DNA of 64,000 nt from Schmidtea polychroa (GCA_044892525.1 CM097887.1:2108001-2172000), one strand, 5' to 3'; numbered from the stretch's first letter, positions 14,485 through 54,972 are shown. A program made the numbers and translations. Notes: a model not told the origin generated them from the letters alone.

Positions 14485-16604
14485 ATGGTTAAAATCTGTG
14501 TTGTTGGGTGCTTACATGGTGAGTTAGACAAAATGTACGATGATGTTAGAGCAACCGAATTAAAATACGATTTTAAAACCGACATAGTATTATGTTGTGG
14601 TGATTTTCAGTCAATTAGAAATGAATCCGATTTAACTGTTATGAGTGCACCATTGAAATATCGTAGACTTGGTGATTTTTGGAAATATTATGCTTCAGAA
14701 AAATCTGTTCCATATTTAACTGTCTTCGTTGGAGGTAATCATGAAGCATCAAACTATCTTCAAGAATTGCCTTATGGTGGCTGGGTTGCTCCTGATGTAT
14801 ACTATATGGGTTATGCCGGTGTCTTGAATTTTATGGGATTAAGAATAGTAGGATTCTCGGGAATTTATAAACGTCATGATTATTACACCGGTCACCATGA
14901 GCATGCTCCGTATGATGACCAGTCAAAGCGCACTGCATATCATACAAGAAATATTGAAGCTTTTCGTTTAAAACAACTTAAAAAACCAGTCGATATTGTT
15001 TTGAGTCACGATTGGCCAAGAGGAATTTATAATTACAACCCAACTCATATAGGGCAGCTAATGAAAGAAAAACCGTATTTTATCGATGAAATTCGAGCAA
15101 ATACCCTTGGAAATCCAGCTGCAGAGGAGATATTAATGCATTTGAAACCTCGATATTGGTTTGCAGCACATCACCATTGCAAATTTGCCGCTCTCGTTCA
15201 ATTTCACAGCGCCGAAAACCCACAGAAAACAACAAAATTTCTCGCATTGGATAAATGTTTACCGTTCAAAAATTATATGCAATTCATCGACATTGAACCG
15301 CAACTGGAAATCGAACTGTGTAATGAAAAGCATTTGTCTCTTGATCCGGAATGGTTGTGCGTTCTCAGGGCAACCAATCATCTGATGTCGATTGCGCGTA
15401 CCACTTGCATCATGCCAATCGCAACCAATGAGGAAAGGTTCGCAGTTATTATCATAAATTATTATTAATCAATAATTTTATTAATTATTTTATTGATATT
15501 GTCTATTTATTATTATTAACTGATATTTATTATTAATAGTCATTATACATAAATAAAAAATTAATAATTTAAAAATATAATTATATTAATATTTAATTTA
15601 TTATTAAAAATTAATGATTAAAAAATATTTTTCATTTTTATTTCCATATTTAATAATTAGAATTTAATATTAATTAAAATAACAAATTATTTATTTCTAA
15701 TTTTTAAAATTATTATTCTATTAATTTTTTAATATTTAATAATTAAAAAAAATTAATTAATAATTAAATAATATATTTTTTATTTTTATTAATTATTTTA
15801 TTAATAGTTATTATAAACAAATAAAAAATAATAATTTAAATATTGAATTATTTACTTCTAATTTTTAAAATTTATTCTATTAATATTTTTAATATTTAAT
15901 AATTAATACAAATTAATAAAAAATAATAATTAAAAAATATTAATTTTATTACAAATTTTATTATTTTTTGAATTTATTGATTTGTCTAATTTATATTTTA
16001 TGATTTATTTTTAATTGGCTGATAAATAAAACCAATCTATAGGTCCGATTTTACTGCCACCGAGGAAGATCTGAAAGAATTGTCTGATTTATTTAACAAT
16101 CAATTCAAAATACCGAACAATTTTGAAGTGACGGCGCCAGTGCACCACGAGGAGTATGAGGATGTGTCGAGGCTCCCGAAACCGGTAGCGATTCACACCA
16201 ATCCACAGACAGATCTGATGAGTGCCATGTTGGAATTGACGAATCCGAATGCGGAATTCCTGGGCAAATCTTGCTCGCTTTTGGAAATTAGCAGAAAACT
16301 GAAGGAATCGAAAGAATCCGATGAGGAGAGTTCTGGTAGCGATGGTGGCGAATCATCTTGTGGTGGAGAGGATGATAATTGCGCTGCCGTGCCGGAGCTG
16401 ATGGGGGACGGAGCGAAGGGCAATAATCCAGAGGAGATCGATATAGATATATGTGATGAGGAGGGGGAGGGGGAGAACGCAATGTCCAATGACAACGGCA
16501 GCGAACCATTTGAGCAATACGATCCTGCGGATTACCCAGCCGATCAGAAGGAGGACAATGATGATGATGATGACGGGTATTGTCCCGCTGCTCCCTTTGT
16601 ATGA
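14485..16604 (+). CDS. DBR1: Lariat debranching enzyme; exons 14485-15437 and 16043-16604
   Basis: Metallophosphoesterase motifs GCLHG, CGDFQ, GGNHE, LSHDWP, WFAAHHH, TKFLALDKCLP. A phase-2 GT-AG intron restores NEER|SDFTATEEDL..FKIPNNF, the DBR1 C-terminal domain, followed by an acidic tail. Confidence 0.96.
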
Positions 16605-30209: not shown

Positions 30210-33200
30210 GGTTGTTAATATCGGTTTTTCGAGCAATCCGATTATCGTTTGTATAAATCCGATTTTAAACCGATTATCGTTTGCACTTTGCATAACCAAA
30301 GCTACTTACATTATTACTATTCACGCACGTGTATAGTATAATTAGTTTTATTCAAAGTTTATACCACACACAAGGAGAATATGAACTGACTGTTTATGTA
30401 AAAAGTTAAAGCATATAAGTAAATTTGTTTTCAATTTCTTCGGTAATTTTCCCTGTATATACTAAAGTATAAATCAAAATAAAACTTTCCGGTGCTGCGG
30501 CGGCCTTATTTTAAAATTAAACATAAACATATCGAAACCATAGATATCAAAAACAAAGATTCCAAAGTGTAAACATTTAAAAGTAAGTACTAAATTCGAT
30601 TTTATTTTTAAATATCAGACAAGTCCTGGTTCATATTCAAAAAGACCAAAGATTCTGCATGATCTGGAAGGAGCCGGTTACGAAGCTTGGTTATCAGACG
30701 TCCAGTGGCCGAAAATAATCGTTCCGATTGCACTGAGGTTGCAGGAATGCATAAGAACTTCCGGGCAAGAATAGCTGTTTTGGGGAAAAGTTTCATATTA
30801 TGTTTCCACCACTCCAGGGCTGTTTCACTTGAGTTTGTTGACCATGATGATTTGACGTAATATTCAAAGTCGGATTCCTCTGGCGCCTGTTGTGCTGCAC
30901 TATCACCAAGGAGAAACATAACTGCATCATGATTTGGTCGTGATCTTTTAGTTAGTGGGATCATGTTATCTTCATCCTGACTCGTCTTCGGCTGTTCGGG
31001 GCAATCTGGCAGCTGTCTGAGGAGATGACGGACATTTTCATACACCAGCTTTTTGAAATCGTCCGGAAATCCAGGAAGATGCTTATACATCGGATCGAGA
31101 ATTGATGCAACAACGCATTCGTTTTTTGCTGTTTCATTATTTTCTAATCCAAAACGACGTGAAATATTCTTAGAAAGATCTCTCTTAAATTCACCCATAA
31201 TGTCAGAATCTTCTTCTTTAATGGTTAAATGATTTTTCACGAGTCCCCATAACATGGGAAAAACACAAGAGGCTGATGGCTGGCTTTCGGCTGACATGAC
31301 GGACGGCACGATCTGCAACGCTTTTAAAACAGGGAGCAATTCAGTCATCAGTTGCCAATAATCGTCCTTCATGCCCAACGTTTTGGCATCGTTCAATTTC
31401 ACCACGTTTTTGTTGCTCAATACTGCAACTACTGGCCATCTCAGTTCTACTAGTCGTTCAAACATGTCATAGACGCTGTTCCAACGAGTCTTACAGTGCT
31501 GAATAAGTTTTAGTGGCGTTTTATCCTTGTCCATGGACAACTGTCTTTTCAGGAGCTCCCCCGTTGCCATTAGGCTATGTGAGAAATGTCCGACTAGTCG
31601 TGCTGCAGCTGATATACATTTGGAAATTTGATGATCCGTGACAACATGGGAGCCCATTGCATTATTGATGCAAAGTTGCAATTTATGCGCCGCACAGTGA
31701 ACGTCAAACCATCCATTGAGATTGCCTGTATGATTGATGTTGGATGCACCATCATGGACACATGCAACAATTTTTTCTTTTATTGACCATTCATCAGCTA
31801 TACTACATAGGTGGTCAGCAATGACGGCTTGTGTGTGGCGTTGAGTCATCAGAATTGTTCCAAGAACAGGCGTCATCATATAGCTTCATTGGTGACACTA
31901 GTCCAGATGTCGGTAGTGTTGACATTTTCATGGATATATTTCGACATTTTGACCACTAAATTATTTTTCATTGCTGTTAGTCGTGCTGTCATCGTCTGAC
32001 GACACGGAGGACGATATCCTGGCTCCACTATCGCCATCAATTCACGGAAGGATTTCGATTCCACGAGCGAAATTGCCAACATATTTTCGGAAATCAATCT
32101 CGCAACAGCAGCCGTAATTTTTTCCTGTTTACTACTCGGACAATTTCTTTGTGTTGTAATCAATGCAGTCAATCGTGTTTGAGTATTTGAAGATGTTGTT
32201 AATCCACCATGTTTGCTACGCAAATGTGCATGCAAACCAGTCGTAGTACCTCCACTCCTACTTATTTGCTGTGCACAGAGCTTACATTGTGCCATCGTCG
32301 CCGAAATTTTATCAAAATTGTCCCAGACGTCAGACTTATTTATACGGAAACCCATAAATTTAACCTGATTTTGTATTGATTTAGATAATATAAAAAATGT
32401 TTATTGAATATTACGTAATATTCAAACTAAACCGCAATTTTCAATTATATGGATTAATAACAGCTACTACGAGAGCAACTAACTGAATGAATGGAAATTA
32501 TATAACAGTTTATATGTTTATAGTAGATTTGAACCATGGATTGGACTTTCCAAAATCTTGTCATAAATTAAAATCCCGAAAATCAATTTACTTCGACCTG
32601 AGCAGCCTCTTAGACATTGTCAAAAGATCAACAAACTGAATAAATTTGAGAATGGTCGTCACCCAAACTTGAAGTTTGTCCTAGTGTCCAACTCTCTTCC
32701 ATATTTCAATGGGTAAACAACCAAACATTATGATTCGAGGAATGGCACATGTCTTTCGATCTCTTTACATCTGGCTTTCATGAAGATGATGCGGTATGCA
32801 ATTCAGTTTATTCTGGTTTTAAGTTAAAACCAGAATAAACTTTTAACCGGTTCGCAGATGCAAGATATCAGATTGCAAAATAGACCTTCACGGACTAAAC
32901 ACAAAATCGCCGACCTCGGCCACATCTAGTCCCTGTCAAGGAGGTTAATAGCTAAGCTTCTGTTATGGACTGCAGTAATCAAATCTTTGGTGGCCGATTT
33001 CGGCAACAAATATCAGGTTGCCAAACAAAACCGGCAAAATGCAAATACTAAAACACACAACCACAACCTTGGCCTCAGCTGGTCCCGATTAAAAGATTTA
33101 ATGGGCACAGTACCTGTCAGGGGCTGTATAAACAAATCAGCGGTTGACGATTACGGACATCAACTGACAAATAACTGGTCAGTCGGTGAGATATGTTGGA

Positions 33201-46283: not shown

Positions 46284-49200
46284 ATGAAAATATTTGTGAC
46301 AACTGAGAGAGATTCCAAAGATGGCCTTGAGATGGAGGTTGATGAATATTCACAAGGAGAGAATATTAAATATTATTTCAATGAAATTCATCAAGAAGAT
46401 CAAACATGGACAAAAGATTATTACCGATTAATATATAAAAATATTATCATAAATGATCACGACTTCATCAGGAAGTATAAAATATCAGATGGAGATAAGA
46501 TCTGGCATGGGAAAATTGAGAACTATTTGGAAAGGTTGATCAAGTATATGAGATATCATTTGATAATTTCCATTGATTCCAGTGATGATGTAATTGTGGA
46601 ATTATTCCTTGCAGGGACCATACCTAATTGGGTTTGGTTAATTATCAAGCTTTATGATTCTATTGACTCGATCAGATCAATTATTGAACGGTTTCAACCA
46701 GAAATTATTCATATTTGGAATAGCAAAGGTGATCAAATGATAGGCAATCAATCAATCACAGATATCAATGAGGATGGATATTATCGATTGATTGTGAGGT
46801 GAATTTTGATTGGTTGGTTGATTGTGAGGTGAATATTGATTGATTGTGAGGGAATATTGATTGGTTGGTTGTGAGGGGATATTGATTGGTTGTGAGGGGA
46901 ATATTGATTGGTTGGTTGATTGTGAGGGGATATTGATTGGTTGTGGGGAATATTGATTGGTTGTGAGGTGAATATTGATTGGTTGTGAGGTGAATATTGA
47001 TTGGTTGATTGTGTTGGATATTGATTGGTTGTGAGGGGAATATTGATTGGTTGATTGTGTTGGATATTGATTGGTTGATTGTGAGGGGATATCGATTGAT
47101 TGTGAGGTGAATATTGATTGGTTGTGAGGGGAATATTGATTGGTTGGTTGTGTTGGATATTGAGTGGTTGTGTTGGATATTGAGTGGTTGTGAGGTGAAT
47201 TTTGATTGGTTGGTTGATTGTGAGGTGAATATTGATTGATTGTGAGGGAATATTGATTGGTTGATTGTGAGGGGATATTGATTGGTTGTGGGGAATATTG
47301 ATTGGTTGTGAGGTGAATATTGATTGGTTGTGAGGGGAATATTGATTGGTTGGTTGATTGTGAGGGGATATTGATTGATTGTGAGGAATATTGATTGGTT
47401 GTGAGGTGAATATTGATTGGTTGTGAGGTGAATATTGATTGGTTGATTGTGTTGGATATTGATTGGTTGTGAGGGGAATATTGATTGGTTGATTGTGTTG
47501 GATATTGATTGGTTGATTGTGAGGGGATATCGATTGATTGTGAGGTGAATATTGATTGGTTGTGAGGGGATATTGGTTGGTTGTGAGGGGAATATTGATT
47601 GGTTGGTTGTGTTGGATATTGAGTGGTTGTGAGGTGAATATTGATTGGTTGGTTGTGTTGGATATTGATTGGTCGTGAGGGGATATTGATTGATTGTGAG
47701 GTGAATATTGATTGGTCGTGATGGGATATTGATTGTGAGGGGAATATTGATTGATTGTGAGGTGAATATTGATTGGTTGGTTGATTGTGAGGGGAATATT
47801 GATTGATTGTGAGGGGATATTGATTGATTGTGAGGGGTTATTGATTGATTGTGAGGGGATATTGATTGATTGTGAGGGGTTATTGATTGATTGTGAGGGG
47901 TTATTGATTGATTGGTTGTGAGGGGATATTGATTAGTTGATTGGGGTGAATTTTGATTGGTTGTGAGGGGATAATGATTGGTTGGTTGTGTTGGATATTG
48001 ATTGGTTGTGAGTGGATATTGATTGGTTGGTTGTGAATATTGATTGGTTGTGTAGTGAATATTGATTGGTTGGTTGATTGCGAGGGGATATTGATTGATT
48101 GTGAAGGGTTATTGATTGATTGGTTGTGAGGGGATATTGATTGGTTATGAGGTGAATATTGATTGGTTGTGAGGTGAATATTGATTGGTTATGAGGTGAA
48201 TATTGATTGGTTATGAGGTGAATATTGATTGGTTGGTTGATTGTGAGGGGATATTGATTGATTGTGAGGGGAATATTGATTGATTGTGAGGGGAATATTG
48301 ATTGATTGTGAGGTGAATATTGATTGGTTGGTTGTGAGGGGATATTGATTGGTTGATTGGGGTGAATTTTGATTGGTTGTGAGGGGATATTGATTGGTTG
48401 GTTGTGTTGGATATTGATTGGTTGGTTGTGAATATTGATTGGTTGTGTAGTGAATATTGATTGGTTGGTTGATTGCGAGGGGATATTGATTGATTAAGAG
48501 GGGAATATTGATTGATTGTGAAGGGTTATTGATTGATTGGTTGTGAGGGGATATTGATTGGTTATGAGGTGAATATTGATTGGTTGTGAGGTGAATATTG
48601 ATTTGTTATCAGGTGAATATTGATTGGTTGGTTGATTGTGAGGGGATATTGATTGATTGTGAGGGGATATTGATTGGTTATGAGGTGAATATTGATTGGT
48701 TGTGAGGTGAATATTGATTGGTTGGTTGTGTCGGATATTGAGTGGTTGTGAGGGGATATTGATTGGTTGTGAGGTGAATATTGATTGGTTGTGAGGGGAA
48801 TATTGATTGTGAGGTGAATATTAATTGATTGTGAGGTGATATTGAATGGTTGATTGTGAATATTGATTGGTAGATTGTGAGTTGAATATTGATTGATTGT
48901 GAGATGAATATTGATATGTTGTGAGGGGAATATTGATTGGTTGTGAGGGGAATATTGATTGGTTGTGAGGGGAATATTGATTGATTGTGAGATGAATATT
49001 GATATGTTGTGAGGGGAATATTGATTGGTTGTGAGGGGAATATTGATTGGTTGATTGTGTTGGATATTGATTGGTTGTGAGAGGAATATTGATTGGTAAC
49101 TAGACGTTGCACATAAATTTATTACACATAAATGAAAATTAATGTCCATTAATATTAGGCTGATTATCTTGCTCTGGAATCTAAGCAAAGTTATTATTTA

Positions 49201-52200
49201 ATAATCTTCCTATACTATGTAAATATATTTTTGTGCTGCCAGAGTTCTTAAACTCACCATACGACCGATCAAGCTTAAGAATTCTCAAGTCTATAATGGT
49301 TTATACCTTAGCTTTATTGGGTGCCTTATCTTCCTGTGACCTCTAAATAATTGCTCAATTAAAATTTTGTTGTCAAATTATTGCATGATGAGATTGGATT
49401 TCACCATGGAAACAAGAATGCCAACCTTCAATGGCATTATTCGTCCGTCGGTTTCCAGCGAGTGTAGAGTTATAACAACTCGACGTAGTGTTCTCAAATC
49501 TTGGTGTTAATATGTCCAGTGATTTCCGTTTATTATTAAACCTTTTTATAATGCATTTTATGAGTAATTTAAATTTTATGTGTAACATCTGTGGATTTAT
49601 TGATTGATTGATTACTGTACTCAATACTCTTATCCATAGATGTGCTGATGAAAAGGTGCAAAATTTTACATTTACTGATTGCTGCGATCAGCATGACAAA
49701 TTCAGATTGAAATTTTGTTATTTCCGGTAATATTGTTTTAATGAATGCTAATATATAATTATGAAATATTCCCATAGATTTGATTTGGATTTTGACCTGA
49801 CTTTCTCATCTACCTTCATTACGGATATGAAAATTATCATTAATAAAGTCAGGTAATTGTTTTAGAAATTAATCAATAATATTAATAATTATAATCAATA
49901 ACAGTAATAATTATAAAAATTAATAATTACCAATAATAGTTATTATCAATAATAATTATCAATAATAATTTTCAATAATAATAATCAATAATCATAATCA
50001 ATAATAATAATCAATAATAATAATTATCAATAATAATAATTATCAATAATAATAATTATCAATAATAATAATAATAATCAATAATAATAATTATCAATAA
50101 TAATAATAATAATCAATAATAATAATCAATAATAATAATAATCAATAATAATAATTATCAATAATAATAATAATCAATAATAATTGATTCCAGACAAATA
50201 ATATTGTCAAATAATAAAATTGATGATATTTTGAATAAAAATTTGTCAGATTTCCCTCATTCTTATGCCAATTCTAAATTTTTATTTTGCATTCATATTT
50301 GTGAACGAATCTGGGATATTTGTGAGGAATATTGGGGACTGATCCAAGATGAGGATAATTTGCAGTGAGTTTAATGTTCGTAATGCATTATTTGTTGATC
50401 ATTTCAGTGAGTGGGGCAAAATGCGATCTTATTTCTGTTTATCTTTGTAAGTGCTATTAATTAATTTTGACACAAATCATTTGATTGGTCGAGCGTTTTG
50501 TTTGTCGTGTGATTTGTGCCGTTTGATTGGATGATAATAATAATTTTGATTATTAATTCATTCAGATTGGATTGTTTGCACAGATATTCTCTTCTCCGAT
50601 CGGATCATATAGAAAATGGAAATCGATCATATAATGAAATTCTGTAAGTTCAATTATTTATAAATCAATTGATATTTGATATTGCACTCTAGAATCGATG
50701 CCATGGATCATGTTTTCGCAATATTAAGCATACATGATGATAGTTGGAAGCGTTCAATAAAACTGTTAGTTGTGCTAATATCTTCAAGGGTTCCCAGACG
50801 CTTTTTATGTTCTGATGTTGTACAATAAAAAATAAATATGAGCTTAAAAGGAATTTAACATTAACCACTTGCCGGGCGATTTTTTTTCATGTTTTCGGTC
50901 AAAAAAAAACTATTTTTTTAAATCATTAATTAATAGTATATAATCATAATATAACGTAAATATATATTTTTTAATTTCCCGAGTTTGTATTCACTAATTA
51001 TTAATTATTGTTATTATATATCAAAGTGCACACACACACACATACATACACAAACAAACAAAAAAACAGTTTGAAAAACACGAAATGTCCGAAGAACGAA
51101 GTGAAACAATTCAAAAACGATGCAGTCGCGCCCGTGGTTATTGGACAACTGATATTTTAGAAAATATGAAAAACATACGAACCTGGAATTCATGTGTGTA
51201 TAGCCGAAAATTCACATGTGTTTATAAAAAAAATGACCTAAGAAATGGCAGTTTAGAACATAAATATCGTAAAATAATGTTGTTTGAAATATCGCTCATA
51301 TGTTATTCCACGCCCGGGATCAGATTTCTTATTCAAAGGACAATATTTTTTCTATATGAGTTTGCGCTCACATGTGAACGCTCGCCCGAAATGGTACACA
51401 TTTTTTACACTCATATTTGAGCGCGCGCCCGGCAAGTGGTTAAAGGAATGTTTAGATAAATAATATGCAGTTCGTCTGGTTTGGCTGACATTAAATCCAA
51501 AAATATCATAAACCAAAATAAGTCCATTTTTGTTTCTACTCCCAATGTGACATGATTTTACATCAGATACTGTATTTATTTCTGTTCCATTGAGGGTCTT
51601 AATGATCGCAGCATTCTAAGAATCTCAATTTGGCGTAAATGAATAGCATATTGTCCTAACTGGCGTAGATATCAGTAAATTAACATTTTCTGAATATAAA
51701 GCATCTAGATCAATATAATCTGCACTTGAACTCATACAACATACAACACCAAGATTAGATAAATCATAAATCAGTTTTATAACAGTCTTTCCATTAAAAA
51801 TAAGAACTCCAATTACATTGTCTTTACGATTATTATTATTAACTTTTAATCCTGAAACATTTATGAAGCGGTATGGTTTTTTCGATTTTGAAAAATTCAG
51901 AAATTAACAAAATAGTGAGGTTCAAATAATTAGACATCGAAATTGAAATAAACTGACAGATTCTTTAAATTTTAAAATACAAAACAAATAATATTTAAAC
52001 AAACCTTTACATAAAGTTTATTTAATTTTTTTAATTAATGGAAAACTTCATTTGACTCAGGACCACTCATGGAAGACCACCAAAGTCAGTCAAGCCGATG
52101 CAAGGTCATTATGACAGCAGCGGAATCAAGGTCACTATAACAACGGCGAATACGTTCATAAGAACTTATAAATAAGGAACGCACCGACAGTTGAAATAAT

Positions 52201-54972
52201 GATAAATGTCTTTCTATTGAATTTCGAGCATTTGTAAGCTCTGGACGATAATTGAAAGGTTACCATAAATAATCAAAATTTGTAATTGTTTAATCTATTT
52301 CTGCAATTGTAATCAAATCAATAAAGGCGAGATTACATTGTGATTGTGCTAATCAATAAAGGCGAGATTACATTGTGATTGTGCTAATCAATAACTAATT
52401 ACCTTCCTGCGAGTTTTTTATTGCTATAATTACTATTGTTGTTAATGTGGATAATATTAATATTATTAAAGACAAGTATATAACAAATAGGAAAGGTTTG
52501 GGAACCGCTGAATGATTTGGCTGACTCTAATAATCATAATTTGCTTCAGATTGATGAATTCCTTCCTTTTATTATTTCGTTCGGATTCTCAGCTTGATGA
52601 TTGGCTAGGTAGCTAGTAAGATCTGATTCGATAAGCACATAGATATTGATTAAATCAGTGATCACCATCGATCGGCAGTCATCGTAATAATAAATGGGGA
52701 AACACATGAATTGAAAGTTCAAACTAATCCGCAAAATATTAGCGAATCAAAACTTGAGATTGCGCGCAATTGTGGTGTAGACATTCAGGATTTGTATTGT
52801 ATTCATTTGGAAGATAATATACAACCGAATGATGAAGATCCGTTTCAAGATGGAGGAATTATCTTTGAAATAATGAAAAGGTTAATTTGATTAGATGAAG
52901 CTTTAATTGATTAAGTATATTTGTCATTATAATTTAGAATAGAAAGCTTTGATGTAGGTAAAGAAATAGCAAGAGGGGGATTCGGTATTGTTTTTCTTTG
53001 CCAGGAAAGAATATCTGGAAAACAGTTCATTATAAAAAAGTCTATTGACAAGAAATCAAGTTTTTACCGGGATATTTACATCAGCAATCATTTGAATGGA
53101 GTAGATAAACTTGTGAGTGGGTTAGACATAGTGAGAGATCATAAAGAAGAGAGCATCTTTTTGGCCATGCAATATATGCCAAGGGTATCCTTAACATTTC
53201 TCATTTATCCATATCAATTATATATCAAAAATTAAAAAATTAAAAATTAAAAAATAGGAAATATTATTTGGGTAATTAAAATAAAATATAAATAGAATAT
53301 AATTAAACCAATAAATTTATTATAAAATGCGAAATAAATTTATTTTTCCCCAACAACAATTATTAAATGCAATAATGATCAAATTCACTTGACAAAGGCA
53401 GTGCCGAAAATTCGTGAGTATCAACAAACATGGATATATTACCGATTTATGGTCGTTAAGCTCTCTTTTCAATAAATTCTATATATATGCATTGTTGGGC
53501 ATTTTGTGCAAGTCGGTGTAACTCTGACTCCTTTGTGTCCTTTTATTAAGAAAATCCAACAACCCAACACAACAATATTTACTCGTAATTACCACAATTA
53601 CACTTTTATTTATTACACATTTTAATGAAACAATTCCAGTTTACACCACTTTAAATAACTCTTTGTTCTGCAATCTTTTAAATTTCAACCTGAATCTTGC
53701 GCAGGGACAAACTTTCCAATGGCAGATCTCCCTTTCTGGCACGCTAGATTCAAAATGATGTGATTATCACTAATGTTAAATGCGCTTTTGCTCCCTTTCA
53801 TTGTAATATATCTCTTATTTCTTCGACCAACTGTAATTCTGTTTACTTGACGGTAGTTTTCATCTAGTAATTATATTATCTCCTTATCAAATTACTTTTG
53901 GCAACTTCCCCTTGCCGTCGGCTAATTAAAATCCATCTACCTAGTTAAATTGACTATTCGAGTCCTCTCATACTGTTCGGGTTTAGTTTTTTTTTAATTA
54001 ATTTTAATTTTTTGTAAATATTTCCTTCTACGGACACTCTTTAACTTTATTTTTTATTAGTTTTGAACTCATTTCATTCGTCGGCATTCGCACATACCAG
54101 TTTCCTCCAGAAAATATTCATTTTTAATTTTCAATTAATATATTTGTACTTTAAATTATTACTGTGAATTTGATGTTTTTTATTGATTCACCTTTTTTTG
54201 ATATATTTACTGATTTATGGTCCTTCTAGCTCTTTGTAATAAATACTTAGTGGAAAAGAAATCAGTGGTGAAATTGTAAAAAATAATTCTTATAAATATG
54301 CCATTGTCAGGGATCACTTACGGAATACATTGAGCAATGCATAAAGCAATGGAAAGGGATACAGGAAAAGGCTGTTGTCAAGATTTCTTATCAAATCCTC
54401 ACACAAATTAATGAAATTCACCAATGCAAAGTTATCCATTGCGACATCAAACGTTTGACGTTGTTAAAATAAATTTTATTTTTTAATTTTGGTTTTTCAG
54501 CGGACAATATTGTTTTTGATGGAAAGGGTAACGCAAAATTGATCGATTACGGACTAGCCAAATACTTGAAAGGAATGGAAAGGAAAGATGAGTCTAGGAA
54601 ACGTAAAGCATCTTCTCCTGGAACTATTTACTACTTAGCACCTGAGATATTTAGTGGAGAATTATATTCATACAAATCTGATATTTGGTCATTTGGAATG
54701 GTGTTAGTTGAGATGGTCACAGGCATATTGATGGATAATTTATCATTGATAATGTTGAGATTGTAGGTAAACCTCCATTTCACTGGGCAGGAATTGGACG
54801 GGTGGTCTTGGAACTTAAAAAGATGAAAAAATTTAAATTCAAACCAATCAAACCTATTTCCAAAGAATTGAACGAATTTATCAACTCATGTTTGACTGTG
54901 AATCCAAATGAGAGGCCAACTGGTGAAGATTTGATGAGATCGGAATTGTTTATTCATTCTTTCTACAAATAA
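46284..54972 (+). CDS. Putative 13-exon ubiquitin-like-domain Ser/Thr protein kinase (~713 aa); exons 46284-46798, 49640-49726, 49778-49852, 50194-50364, 50408-50446, 50566-50643, 50693-50764, 52550-52615, 52659-52880, 52938-53184, 54311-54452, 54501-54722, 54767-54972
   Basis: Exon 1 is ubiquitin-like (MKIFV..LEMEVD..ENIK..YRLIYKN..KYKISDGDKI). Eight consecutive symmetric phase-2 exons keep the frame open. Kinase motifs: ARGGFG, FIIKK, HCDIKPDNI, DYG, GTIYYLAPE, DIWSFG, PNERPT. The kinase part is high confidence; its fusion to the 5' part is moderate, and it could be two genes with the first ending at TAA 50828. Confidence 0.65.
46790..49097. repeat. ~2.3 kb G/T-rich compound minisatellite (~17-26 bp units, gaatattgattggttgtgaggt-type) with higher-order duplications
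   Basis: About 100 variable units, strongly C-poor on the + strand. The block at ~47900-48120 recurs at ~48330-48560. Confidence 0.97.
49260..49530 (-). pseudogene. MULE/Mutator transposase C-terminal relic
   Basis: CYNSTLAGNRRTNNAIEGWHSCF..HH, matching the RTNN.VEGWH..F...HP motif. Confidence 0.8.
49870..50183. repeat. (AAT)n / aataataatc low-complexity tract inside an intron
   Basis: Directly visible. It lies between donor 49853 and acceptor 50193. Confidence 0.9.
50865..51439. mobile_element. 575 bp non-autonomous piggyBac-type element
   Basis: Perfect 14 bp TIR ccacttgccgggcg, flanked by TTAA at 50861-50864 and 51440-51443. Confidence 0.92.
51462..51690 (-). pseudogene. Dienelactone hydrolase / CMBL-like N-terminal fragment
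   Basis: IKTLNGTEINTV..KNGLILVYDIFGFNVSQTRRTA resembles the V(Y/Q)DIFG motif of this family. Stops lie upstream and no nucleophile region follows. Confidence 0.55.

What the first reader, a model, noticed from the sequence alone, without database searches (positions are those of the whole stretch)
46284..54972. Hidden 13-exon gene joining ubiquitin-like domains to a C-terminal kinase
Manual splicing links a ubiquitin-like first exon, a middle region I cannot assign (49640-50764), a second beta-grasp-like exon (VIVIINGETHELKVQ..SKLEIARNCGVD..QDGGII, 52659-52880) and a complete kinase domain into one open frame of 713 aa. IKK/TBK1 kinases have the ubiquitin-like domain after the kinase; here the order is reversed, and I do not recognise this architecture. 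The kinase has variant motifs (HCD for HRD, DYG for DFG, Asp at the alpha-C Glu position). The join depends on donor GTTAGT at 50765; reading through gives a stop at 50828, so a kinase-less short isoform is also possible.
Basis: partly seen in the sequence, partly recalled or inferred. Interest (0 to 1): 0.7.

Follow-up and report, generated by a model that had tools for sequence, protein, structure and literature searches.

The report
Planarian kinase with three ubiquitin-like domains
This is a real 13-exon gene of a planarian-restricted family (at least 12 loci in this genome) whose protein carries a double ubiquitin-like head, an unassigned middle region and a third ubiquitin-like domain directly in front of a protein kinase; I found this domain layout neither in the searched protein collections nor in the paper searches I ran.

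Summary

**Domains**
- Exon 1 folds with high confidence as two ubiquitin-like domains. Its best matches are linear di-ubiquitin, FAT10, ISG15 and OASL.
- Exon 9 folds as a third ubiquitin-like domain.
- Exons 10-13 encode a complete protein kinase with all catalytic residues. It has HCD and DYG where the paralogues compared mostly have HRD and all have DF(G/D).

**The doubtful join, 50764/52550**
- It is a family feature. In four divergent paralogues the same two exons are separated by a 42-46-nt GT-AG intron in the same phase.
- The window's 1,785-nt intron is swollen by a young inverted-repeat element and an older dispersed repeat.
- The ten closest kinase paralogues each lie downstream of a double ubiquitin-like exon, on the same strand.

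**Distribution:** among 1.84 billion representative proteins only six fragments match the head, and none is full length.

**Limits**
- A kinase-less or kinase-only isoform at this locus is therefore not excluded.
- The function is inferred only.

The parts
46284..46798 (+). Exon 1: start codon, ubiquitin-like domain 1 (aa 1-77, 46284-46514), a linker helix with a disordered stretch (aa 78-101), and ubiquitin-like domain 2 (aa 102-171, 46587-46796). There is no Gly-Gly end; the sequence reads YYRLIVR and runs on into exon 2.
   Evidence: The Pfam ubiquitin family matches aa 3-73 at E 6.5e-5, 23.1 bits, just under the 25.4 cut-off. The AlphaFold2 model has pLDDT 85 and pTM 0.80 with two beta-beta-alpha-beta-beta units. 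The best Foldseek PDB match is linear di-ubiquitin at E 1.5e-9, followed by FAT10, ISG15 and the OASL tandem domains. The own genome holds 37 matches.
46814..49097 (.). A minisatellite of about 100 copies of a 22-nt unit inside intron 1. It begins at the exon 1 donor, and each unit repeats the last exon bases plus the GTGAG|GTGAAT splice-site sequence.
   Evidence: Tandem Repeats Finder reports period 22, 100.4 copies and 77% matches. Strong matches in the genome lie only within this intron. Intron 1 is only about 55-60 nt in paralogues L017 and L013. Paralogue L033 has a related 16-nt repeat at the same place.
49640..49726 (+). Exon 2, the start of the unassigned middle region. It carries the family motif F..(D/E)CC..HDK.
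   Evidence: Homologous exons occur in L013 and L017 and in the predicted protein P0004. It has no Pfam family.
49778..49852 (+). Exon 3, middle region.
   Evidence: It has no Pfam family.
50194..50364 (+). Exon 4, middle region, with the conserved FLF...RIWDIC motif.
   Evidence: The own genome holds 16 matches. At eight to nine of the paired loci (at some only through a 22-kb gap) they lie between the double ubiquitin-like exon and the kinase; seven others lie in copies without a detected kinase. It has no Pfam family.
50408..50446 (+). Exon 5, middle region (EWGKMRSYFCLS).
   Evidence: L013 has a counterpart, EWHSMKLFFLTAL.
50566..50643 (+). Exon 6, middle region.
   Evidence: L013 has a counterpart.
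50693..50764 (+). Exon 7, middle region. Its donor is GTTAGT, in phase 2.
   Evidence: Counterparts with the same phase occur in L013, L014, L016 and L029, followed there by introns of 46, 46, 42 and 44 nt.
50861..51443 (.). A 583-nt inverted-repeat transposable element (MITE-like) inserted in intron 7.
   Evidence: It has perfect 18-nt terminal inverted repeats. At least 68 matches of mostly 92-98% identity are spread over four chromosomes.
51444..52083 (.). An older dispersed repeat in intron 7.
   Evidence: The genome holds at least 50 matches at 72-87% identity.
52550..52615 (+). Exon 8, the end of the middle region. It holds an in-frame ATG (52554) that the paralogues lack.
   Evidence: Counterparts occur in L013, L014, L016 and L029, which have W, W, L and F at the position of the Met.
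52659..52880 (+). Exon 9: ubiquitin-like domain 3 (aa 368-441). It ends about five residues before the first kinase strand.
   Evidence: The AlphaFold2 model has pLDDT 85.7 and the order beta-beta-alpha-beta-beta. Foldseek PDB matches NEDD8 at E 2e-4 with TM 0.65, then ISG15 and the ubiquilin domains. Seven paralogous sequences align with it.
52938..53184 (+). Exon 10: kinase N-lobe, with the glycine loop ARGGFGIV, the beta-3 lysine in FIIKK, and the YRDI motif.
   Evidence: Pfam Pkinase positions 2-81, E 3.4e-5.
54311..54452 (+). Exon 11: kinase hinge to catalytic loop (HCDIK).
   Evidence: Pfam Pkinase positions 85-125. Most paralogues read HRDIK.
54501..54722 (+). Exon 12: the rest of the catalytic loop (PDN), DYG, a long activation segment with RKRKASS, APE and DIWSFG. 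It is followed by a GC donor.
   Evidence: Pfam Pkinase positions 127-192, E 2.6e-16, 60.3 bits against a cut-off of 31.7. Paralogues L029, L013 and L018 have GT at this donor.
54767..54972 (+). Exon 13: the kinase C-terminal part (GKPPF ... NPNERP) and the stop codon.
   Evidence: Paralogues are 32-67% identical over it.

Best explanation
The stretch holds one protein-coding gene of 13 exons. It belongs to a family found so far only in planarian-like sequences.

**Product (713 residues)**
- A head of two ubiquitin-like domains that cannot be conjugated, because it has no Gly-Gly end.
- About 195 residues with no recognisable family.
- A third ubiquitin-like domain.
- A serine/threonine-type protein kinase about five residues later, with every catalytic residue present.

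**Shown:** the exon structure, the folds of the three ubiquitin-like domains, the kinase motifs, and the fact that this order of parts is ancestral to the family.

**Inferred:**
- The gene is transcribed as one unit at this locus.
- The kinase is active.
- The ubiquitin-like domains work as built-in regulatory or docking modules. The third would pack on the kinase N-lobe. The head would recruit partners or bring kinase molecules together for activation, as the ubiquitin-like domains of protein kinase D and of TBK1/IKK do.
- The many diverged, clustered and partly decayed copies suggest a fast-evolving signalling role, possibly in defence.
For: - **Frame:** it is open over 713 codons across 13 exons.
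- **Colinear paralogue:** L013 matches residues 1-706 of the model exon by exon.
- **Exon 7/8 join:** the intron there is 46 nt in L013, 46 nt in L014, 42 nt in L016 and 44 nt in L029. All four are GT-AG and in phase 2, as in the window. None has a Met at the start of exon 8.
- **Compact copy:** L029 packs every part into about 3 kb.
- **Pairing:** the ten best matches of the kinase exon in the genome (E 1e-24 to 6e-11) each lie 6-25 kb downstream of a double ubiquitin-like exon on the same strand. The eleventh match, a different kinase, does not.
- **Intron 7:** it is at least 1,220 of 1,785 nt transposon-derived.
- **Folds:**
- **Independent gene model:** the predicted protein P0001, from a different genome or unassembled copy (best match here 63%), also puts the double head and a kinase C-lobe in one product, and it passes the Pfam ubiquitin cut-off.
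- **Indirect sign of expression:** small runs guessed to be RNA, from two studies, hold 12-30% of the words of the stretch. The exons make up 24% of it.
Against:
- **Signs that could mean relaxed constraint in this copy:**
  - HCD and DYG, where the paralogues compared mostly have HRD and all have DF(G/D).
  - A GC donor in intron 12.
  - About 100 decoy copies of the exon 1 donor in intron 1.
  - A 1.8-kb transposon-filled intron 7.
- **Room for separate products:** AATAAA motifs follow the read-through stop, and exon 8 holds an in-frame ATG. A kinase-less or a kinase-only product is therefore possible here.
- **Decayed paralogues:** L013 has a frameshift and L029 has a degenerate kinase.
- **Function:** nothing tested here bears on it.
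Confidence: 0.75

Rival explanations
1. There are two adjacent genes. One encodes a double ubiquitin-like plus helical protein ending near 50828. The other encodes a ubiquitin-like-kinase protein starting at the ATG of exon 8 (52554) or at 52512. On this view they travel together in duplications, or were split at this locus by the transposon insertions.
For: - Reading through the exon 7 donor reaches a stop after 21 codons, with AATAAA motifs around it.
- Exon 8 begins L-L-M, so an in-frame ATG exists. A second ATG at 52512 opens the same frame.
- The inverted-repeat element in intron 7 is young, with copies mostly 92-98% identical. Both halves could therefore still look intact after a recent split.
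- No RNA evidence was obtained.
Against: - In four divergent paralogues the gap between the two halves is a 42-46-nt GT-AG intron in the same phase. That leaves no room for a terminator and a promoter. None has a Met there, and exon 7 never ends in a stop.
- Introns of 1.1 and 2.8 kb occur elsewhere in this same model.
Confidence: 0.15
2. This is a decaying or non-functional copy of the family. The frame is still open, but the gene is no longer properly spliced, or its kinase is no longer active.
For: - HCD and DYG replace the HRD found in most and the DF(G/D) found in all of the paralogues compared.
- The donor of intron 12 is GC.
- About 100 donor-like copies lie in intron 1.
- Other family members are clearly damaged: L013 has a frameshift and L029 reads HGDIN and DFD.
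Against: - The nearest paralogues are only about 50-67% identical. Yet 713 codons stay open, every exon keeps usable splice sites, and every catalytic residue is kept (Lys, Asp of HCD, Asn, Asp of DYG, APE). That argues for continued selection.
- GC-AG introns and non-RD kinases both function in other animals (established knowledge).
Confidence: 0.08
3. The model is a chance product of manual splicing in AT-rich DNA and not a gene.
For: Several exons are short (39-87 nt) and have no Pfam match.
Against: - Every exon, including the short ones, has a sequence-similar counterpart in the same order in paralogues.
- Three domains fold with pLDDT of about 85.
- Pfam Pkinase is covered colinearly by exons 10-12.
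Confidence: 0.02

Closest known systems
TBK1 / IKK-family kinases (kinase domain, then ubiquitin-like domain, then helical scaffold-dimerisation domain)
   Same: One polypeptide combines a protein kinase, a ubiquitin-like domain next to the kinase, and a region with no family match, which is helical only by guess here.
   Different: - The order is reversed, with the ubiquitin-like domains and middle region before the kinase.
- There are three ubiquitin-like domains where TBK1/IKK has one.
- The kinase is not IKK-like by sequence. No IKK or TBK1 chain is among the best PDB matches, which are MAP3K2, RSK, NEK2, JAK3, OSR1, PAK and MST4, all at similar weak scores.
- The fold of the middle region was not determined.
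Protein kinase D (N-terminal ubiquitin-like domain that drives dimerisation and trans-autophosphorylation; PMC6768651)
   Same: A ubiquitin-like domain lies N-terminal to a Ser/Thr kinase and acts as a built-in regulatory module, not as a modifier.
   Different: - Protein kinase D has one ubiquitin-like domain, followed by C1 and PH domains. No such domains were found here.
- Here one ubiquitin-like domain directly abuts the kinase.
- A homodimer test of the double head gave no verdict.
Plant ubiquitin-like-domain kinases (type II PI4K-gamma, UbDK; Galvao et al. 2008, cited in PMC6792133)
   Same: Ubiquitin-like domains lie N-terminal to a C-terminal kinase domain that phosphorylates proteins.
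   Different: The catalytic domain there is of the PI3/PI4-kinase type. Here it is a classical protein kinase, PF00069. There is no sequence relationship, and the lineage is different.
ISG15, FAT10 and the C-terminal tandem ubiquitin-like domains of OASL
   Same: They have two ubiquitin-like domains in tandem, and they are among the best structural matches of exon 1. In OASL the pair is fused to an enzyme-like domain.
   Different: - There is no C-terminal Gly-Gly, so this head cannot be conjugated.
- Sequence identity is 5-17%.
- The pair sits at the N-terminus of a kinase.
Kinases with other beta-grasp modules upstream (Raf RBD, MEKK2/3 and MEK5 PB1, DCLK doublecortin domains); from general knowledge, not tested here
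   Same: One or two beta-grasp modules lie before the kinase domain.
   Different: Exons 1 and 9 match ubiquitin, NEDD8, ISG15 and ubiquilin-type domains best, not PB1 or doublecortin. RBD-named entries appear only at low rank.

Membership tests
Ubiquitin family / beta-grasp fold | Sequence match to Pfam PF00240 at or above the gathering score. | tested here: inconclusive
   Domain 1 of the window's protein scores 23.1 bits against a cut-off of 25.4, E 6.5e-5. The relative P0001 scores 25.8 bits and passes. Domains 2 and 3 have no Pfam match.
Ubiquitin family / beta-grasp fold | A beta-beta-alpha-beta-beta grasp fold. | tested here: met
   All three domains meet it. The models have pLDDT 85.0 and 85.7. 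Foldseek gives probability 1.0 to di-ubiquitin, FAT10 and ISG15 for exon 1 (E 1.5e-9), and to NEDD8, ISG15 and ubiquilin for exon 9 (E 2e-4, TM 0.65).
Conjugatable ubiquitin-like modifiers (ubiquitin, ISG15, FAT10, NEDD8) | An exposed or cleavable C-terminal Gly-Gly. | tested here: not met
   Domain 2 ends YYRLIVR and continues CADEK. Domain 3 ends EIMKR and continues IESFD. There is no Gly-Gly in either.
Eukaryotic protein kinase (PF00069) | Profile match above the gathering score, colinear over the domain. | tested here: met
   Exon 12 alone scores 60.3 bits against a cut-off of 31.7. Exons 10, 11 and 12 cover profile positions 2-81, 85-125 and 127-192 in order. Exon 13 aligns with the paralogues' C-terminal kinase part.
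Eukaryotic protein kinase (PF00069) | The catalytic residues: beta-3 Lys, catalytic-loop Asp and Asn, the metal-binding Asp of DFG, and APE. | tested here: met
   FIIKK, HCDIKPDN, DYG and APE are present. The variants are Cys for Arg in HRD, Tyr for Phe in DFG, and Asp at the inferred alpha-C Glu position. The last is a family trait; L016 has Glu there.
Eukaryotic protein kinase (PF00069) | Phosphotransfer activity. | not testable with these tools
   This needs a biochemical assay.
IKK / TBK1 family | Domain order: kinase, then ubiquitin-like domain, then scaffold-dimerisation domain. | tested here: not met
   The order here is two ubiquitin-like domains, the middle region, a third ubiquitin-like domain, then the kinase.
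IKK / TBK1 family | A kinase domain closest to IKK/TBK1 kinases. | tested here: not met
   No IKK or TBK1 chain is among the best 60 PDB matches of exon 12. None is among the 29 matches of the L013 C-lobe at E up to 1e-10.
Plant ubiquitin-like-domain kinases (PI4K-gamma) | A PI3/PI4-kinase type catalytic domain. | tested here: not met
   The Pfam matches are Pkinase and PK_Tyr_Ser-Thr, with no PI3_PI4_kinase match.
Protein kinase D | C1 and PH domains between the ubiquitin-like domain and the kinase. | tested here: not met
   Five of the seven middle-region exons were scanned singly and none has a significant Pfam match; exons 5 and 8 were not scanned. The relative P0004, which covers the head and part of the middle region, has none either.

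The most novel reading that the evidence does not exclude
Planarians assembled on their own a TBK1/IKK-like signalling kinase in permuted order: an ISG15-like double head, a helical scaffold, a ubiquitin-like domain, then the kinase. They then expanded it into a fast-evolving family of a dozen or more genes. On this reading it is a lineage-specific hub of innate immune or stress signalling, and the head reads or mimics ubiquitin or ISG15-type signals.
Probability: 0.15. Interest if true: 0.75.

Novelty: new variant of a known kind. Interest (0 to 1): 0.5.

Why it matters
- **Annotation gap.** The finding adds a protein-kinase architecture that public protein sets hold only as fragments. It also shows that a whole family of at least 12 loci is missed or truncated in planarian annotation.
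- **Comparison with known kinases.** Ubiquitin-like domains built into kinases control activation in TBK1/IKK and protein kinase D. A family with three such domains, one of them abutting the N-lobe, offers a natural comparison for how these modules regulate kinases.
- **Testability.** Planarians allow RNAi, so the family's role can be tested directly. The turnover of the family hints at defence or stress signalling.
- **Ordinary outcome.** If the function turns out to be ordinary, the result is still a corrected gene model and a family definition.

Tried and rejected
- **Homodimer of the double head.** Complex prediction gave no verdict, with scores of 0.01 and 0.00. This is not evidence either way.
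- **Middle region.**
  - The exons scanned (2, 3, 4, 6, 7) and P0004 have no significant Pfam match.
  - The ESM Atlas feature search returned only unnamed clusters at chance-level scores.
  - A zinc-site idea from the Cys/His motifs was dropped, because the cysteines are not conserved across paralogues.
- **Sequence search of exon 1 against PDB.** It found nothing meaningful.
- **Kinase group.** The PDB matches of exons 10, 12 and 13 and of the L013 C-lobe are weak and spread over the STE, AGC, NEK, JAK and MAPK groups. No group is assigned.
- **Word-index search with the head of P0001.** It found only P0001 itself. P0001 is not on record on any contig.
- **An apparent single open frame across exons 7-9 in L037.** I rejected it as evidence, because the upstream part of that alignment is weak.
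- **Alignment A3 of kinase fragments.** It misplaced the exon 13 pieces and was not used.
- **Literature.** Searches for a planarian kinome or a ubiquitin-like kinase family found no description.

Full report
**Observation**

The 13 exons are 46284-46798, 49640-49726, 49778-49852, 50194-50364, 50408-50446, 50566-50643, 50693-50764, 52550-52615, 52659-52880, 52938-53184, 54311-54452, 54501-54722 and 54767-54972. They join into 2,142 nt, which is 713 codons plus a stop with no internal stop. All acceptors are AG. Eleven donors are GT, and the donor of intron 12 is GC (gcatat at 54723). The donor at 50765 is GTTAGT, and reading through it reaches a stop at 50826-50828.

**What the parts are**

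- *Pfam.* It finds the ubiquitin family in exon 1 (aa 3-73, E 6.5e-5, 23.1 bits, just under the 25.4 cut-off). It finds the protein kinase profile colinearly in exons 10, 11 and 12 (positions 2-81, 85-125 and 127-192; exon 12 alone scores 60.3 bits). The middle exons that were scanned (2, 3, 4, 6 and 7) have nothing significant.
- *Exon 1.* An AlphaFold2 model built on an alignment of 25 family sequences has pLDDT 85 and pTM 0.80. It shows two beta-grasp units, residues 1-77 and 102-170. Its best PDB matches are linear di-ubiquitin (E 1.5e-9), then FAT10, ISG15 and the OASL tandem domains. AlphaFold DB gives polyubiquitin-like entries.
- *Exon 9.* Its model has pLDDT 85.7 and is a third ubiquitin-like domain, matching NEDD8 (E 2e-4, TM 0.65), ISG15 and ubiquilin.
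- *No conjugation.* Neither domain 2 nor domain 3 ends in Gly-Gly, so these are built-in domains and not modifiers.
- *Position of domain 3.* It ends about five residues before the first kinase strand.
- *Kinase.* It keeps the beta-3 Lys, the Asp and Asn of the catalytic loop (HCDIKPDN), the Asp of DYG, and APE. Most paralogues compared read HRD (two read HGD or HFD) and all read DF(G/D), so HCD and DYG are particular to this copy. The Asp in YRDI is a family trait, and one paralogue (L016) has Glu in that column.
- *Kinase group.* PDB sequence matches are weak and scattered over MAP3K2, RSK, NEK2, JAK3, OSR1, PAK, MST4 and a MAPK. None is an IKK or TBK1 chain. I assign no kinase group.

**One gene or two**

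The comparative evidence is strong.

- *Family size.* The genome is 781 Mb, and the window is C3:2108001-2172000. It holds 37 matches to the double ubiquitin-like exon.
- *Pairing.* The ten best matches of kinase exon 12 (E 1e-24 to 6e-11) each lie 6-25 kb downstream of such an exon on the same strand. The next match, a different kinase with a 914-residue open frame, does not. With the compact copy on C2 at 126.31 Mb this makes 12 loci. Matches to exon 4 and exon 9 lie in between, in the right order.
- *Colinear paralogue.* L013 matches residues 1-706 of the model exon by exon.
- *The disputed join.* The counterparts of exons 7 and 8 are separated by GT-AG introns of 46 nt (L013), 46 nt (L014), 42 nt (L016) and 44 nt (L029). 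All are in phase 2, as in the window. Exon 7 never ends in a stop, and no paralogue has a Met at the start of exon 8. Gaps of that size leave no room for the end of one gene and the start of another.
- *Compact copy.* In L029 all parts fit in about 3 kb.
- *Why the window's intron 7 is long.* It is 1,785 nt because it contains a 583-nt element with perfect 18-nt inverted ends, which has at least 68 matches of mostly 92-98% identity. It also contains a roughly 640-nt older dispersed repeat.
- *Intron 1.* It is about 55-60 nt in L017 and L013. In the window it is 2,842 nt because of a local 2.3-kb minisatellite.

The architecture is therefore ancestral to the family, and the window's copy keeps it in frame.

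What remains open is this locus at the RNA level. AATAAA motifs follow the read-through stop, and exon 8 has an in-frame ATG. A kinase-less or kinase-only product is therefore possible. Indirectly, small runs guessed to be RNA, from two studies, hold 12-30% of the words of the stretch, and the exons make up 24% of it.

**Distribution**

An exhaustive HMMER search of 1.84 billion representative proteins with the 171-residue head found only six proteins.

- Two are UniParc entries. P0001 (315 aa) has the double head plus a kinase C-lobe in one predicted product. P0004 (286 aa) has the head plus part of the middle region.
- Four are short products from metagenome contigs.
- P0004 is 72-74% identical to a locus of this genome, and P0001 at most 63%. 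They therefore do not come from this assembly, and probably come from a related species.
- No full-length member is in the library. A word-index search with the head of P0001 found only P0001 itself.

Earlier notes of this scan name the genome as a Schmidtea planarian. I did not test that. Literature searches found no description of such a family.

**How it probably works (inference)**

The protein is most likely an active, non-RD Ser/Thr kinase whose three ubiquitin-like domains are regulatory. Domain 3, fused directly to the N-lobe, would modulate the kinase. The double head and the middle region would dock partners or bring kinase molecules together. Precedents are the N-terminal ubiquitin-like domain of protein kinase D, which drives dimerisation and trans-autophosphorylation (PMC6768651), and the ubiquitin-like domain of TBK1/IKK. 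A homodimer test of the head gave no verdict. The clustered, diverged and partly decayed copies point to rapid turnover, as in defence-related families. L013 has a frameshift and L029 reads HGDIN and DFD. This remains a guess.

**Comparison with what is known**

- Ubiquitin-like domains before a kinase exist in protein kinase D and in plant PI4K-gamma-type ubiquitin-like-domain kinases (PMC6792133, citing Galvao et al. 2008).
- Tandem ubiquitin-like pairs exist in ISG15, FAT10 and OASL.
- TBK1/IKK has the same kinds of parts in the opposite order.

This family fails the defining tests of each of these. It has no Gly-Gly, no PI3/PI4-kinase domain and no C1 or PH domains, and its kinase is not IKK-like. 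I therefore rate it a new variant of a known kind: a classical protein kinase with three N-terminal ubiquitin-like domains, restricted so far to planarian-like sequences.

**Verdict**

There are three ubiquitin-like domains, not two, and the order has precedents. Interest is moderate (0.5). It is a sound, undescribed architecture and gene family, with function and transcript structure still to be shown.

Noticed in passing
window 46814-49097, and L033:1620-2023: The 2.3-kb minisatellite in intron 1 grew out of the exon 1/intron 1 boundary. Each 22-nt unit repeats the codons for R-L-I-V plus the GTGAG|GTGAAT donor, which leaves about 100 decoy donor sites. A paralogue (L033) has a related 16-nt array (TTGATTTATTGATTGG, 25 copies) at the same place, so the conserved TTGATTG-rich exon end seems to seed repeat expansion.
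   Followed up: partly
window 50861-51443: A 583-nt element with perfect 18-nt inverted ends (TTAACCACTTGCCGGGCG) has at least 68 matches of mostly 92-98% identity on four chromosomes. Many copies carry an extra insert after position 160. It is a young MITE-like family.
   Followed up: partly
window 51444-52083: An older dispersed repeat lies directly beside the young element, with at least 50 matches at 72-87% identity.
   Followed up: partly
G000:C2:145.6-147.7 Mb (for example L035), C2:143.02 Mb and C109: A cluster of copies has the double ubiquitin-like exon and the exon 4-like middle exon, often with stops. No kinase match was detected nearby. It may be a kinase-less or decayed sub-family.
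   Followed up: no
L014 (C2:188777500-188786500) and L015 (C3:659000-668000): Two family copies on different chromosomes give near-identical match scores in all parts. This is either a very recent duplication or the same sequence assembled twice.
   Followed up: no
L013 (C3:1713000-1722000, minus strand): The paralogue closest in the kinase has a one-base frame shift between ubiquitin-like domains 1 and 2. It is probably a recent pseudogene or an assembly error.
   Followed up: partly
window 14485-15465 (+): An open frame with the metallophosphatase and C-terminal domains of lariat debranching enzyme DBR1 (E 1.8e-18).
   Followed up: no
window 30611-31879 (-): A 423-residue open frame with the hAT transposase dimerisation domain (E 6.9e-19).
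   Followed up: no
   Followed up: no
window 7001-7606 (+): An open frame with a weak TRAF-type zinc finger match (E 6.7e-4, below the Pfam cut-off).
   Followed up: no
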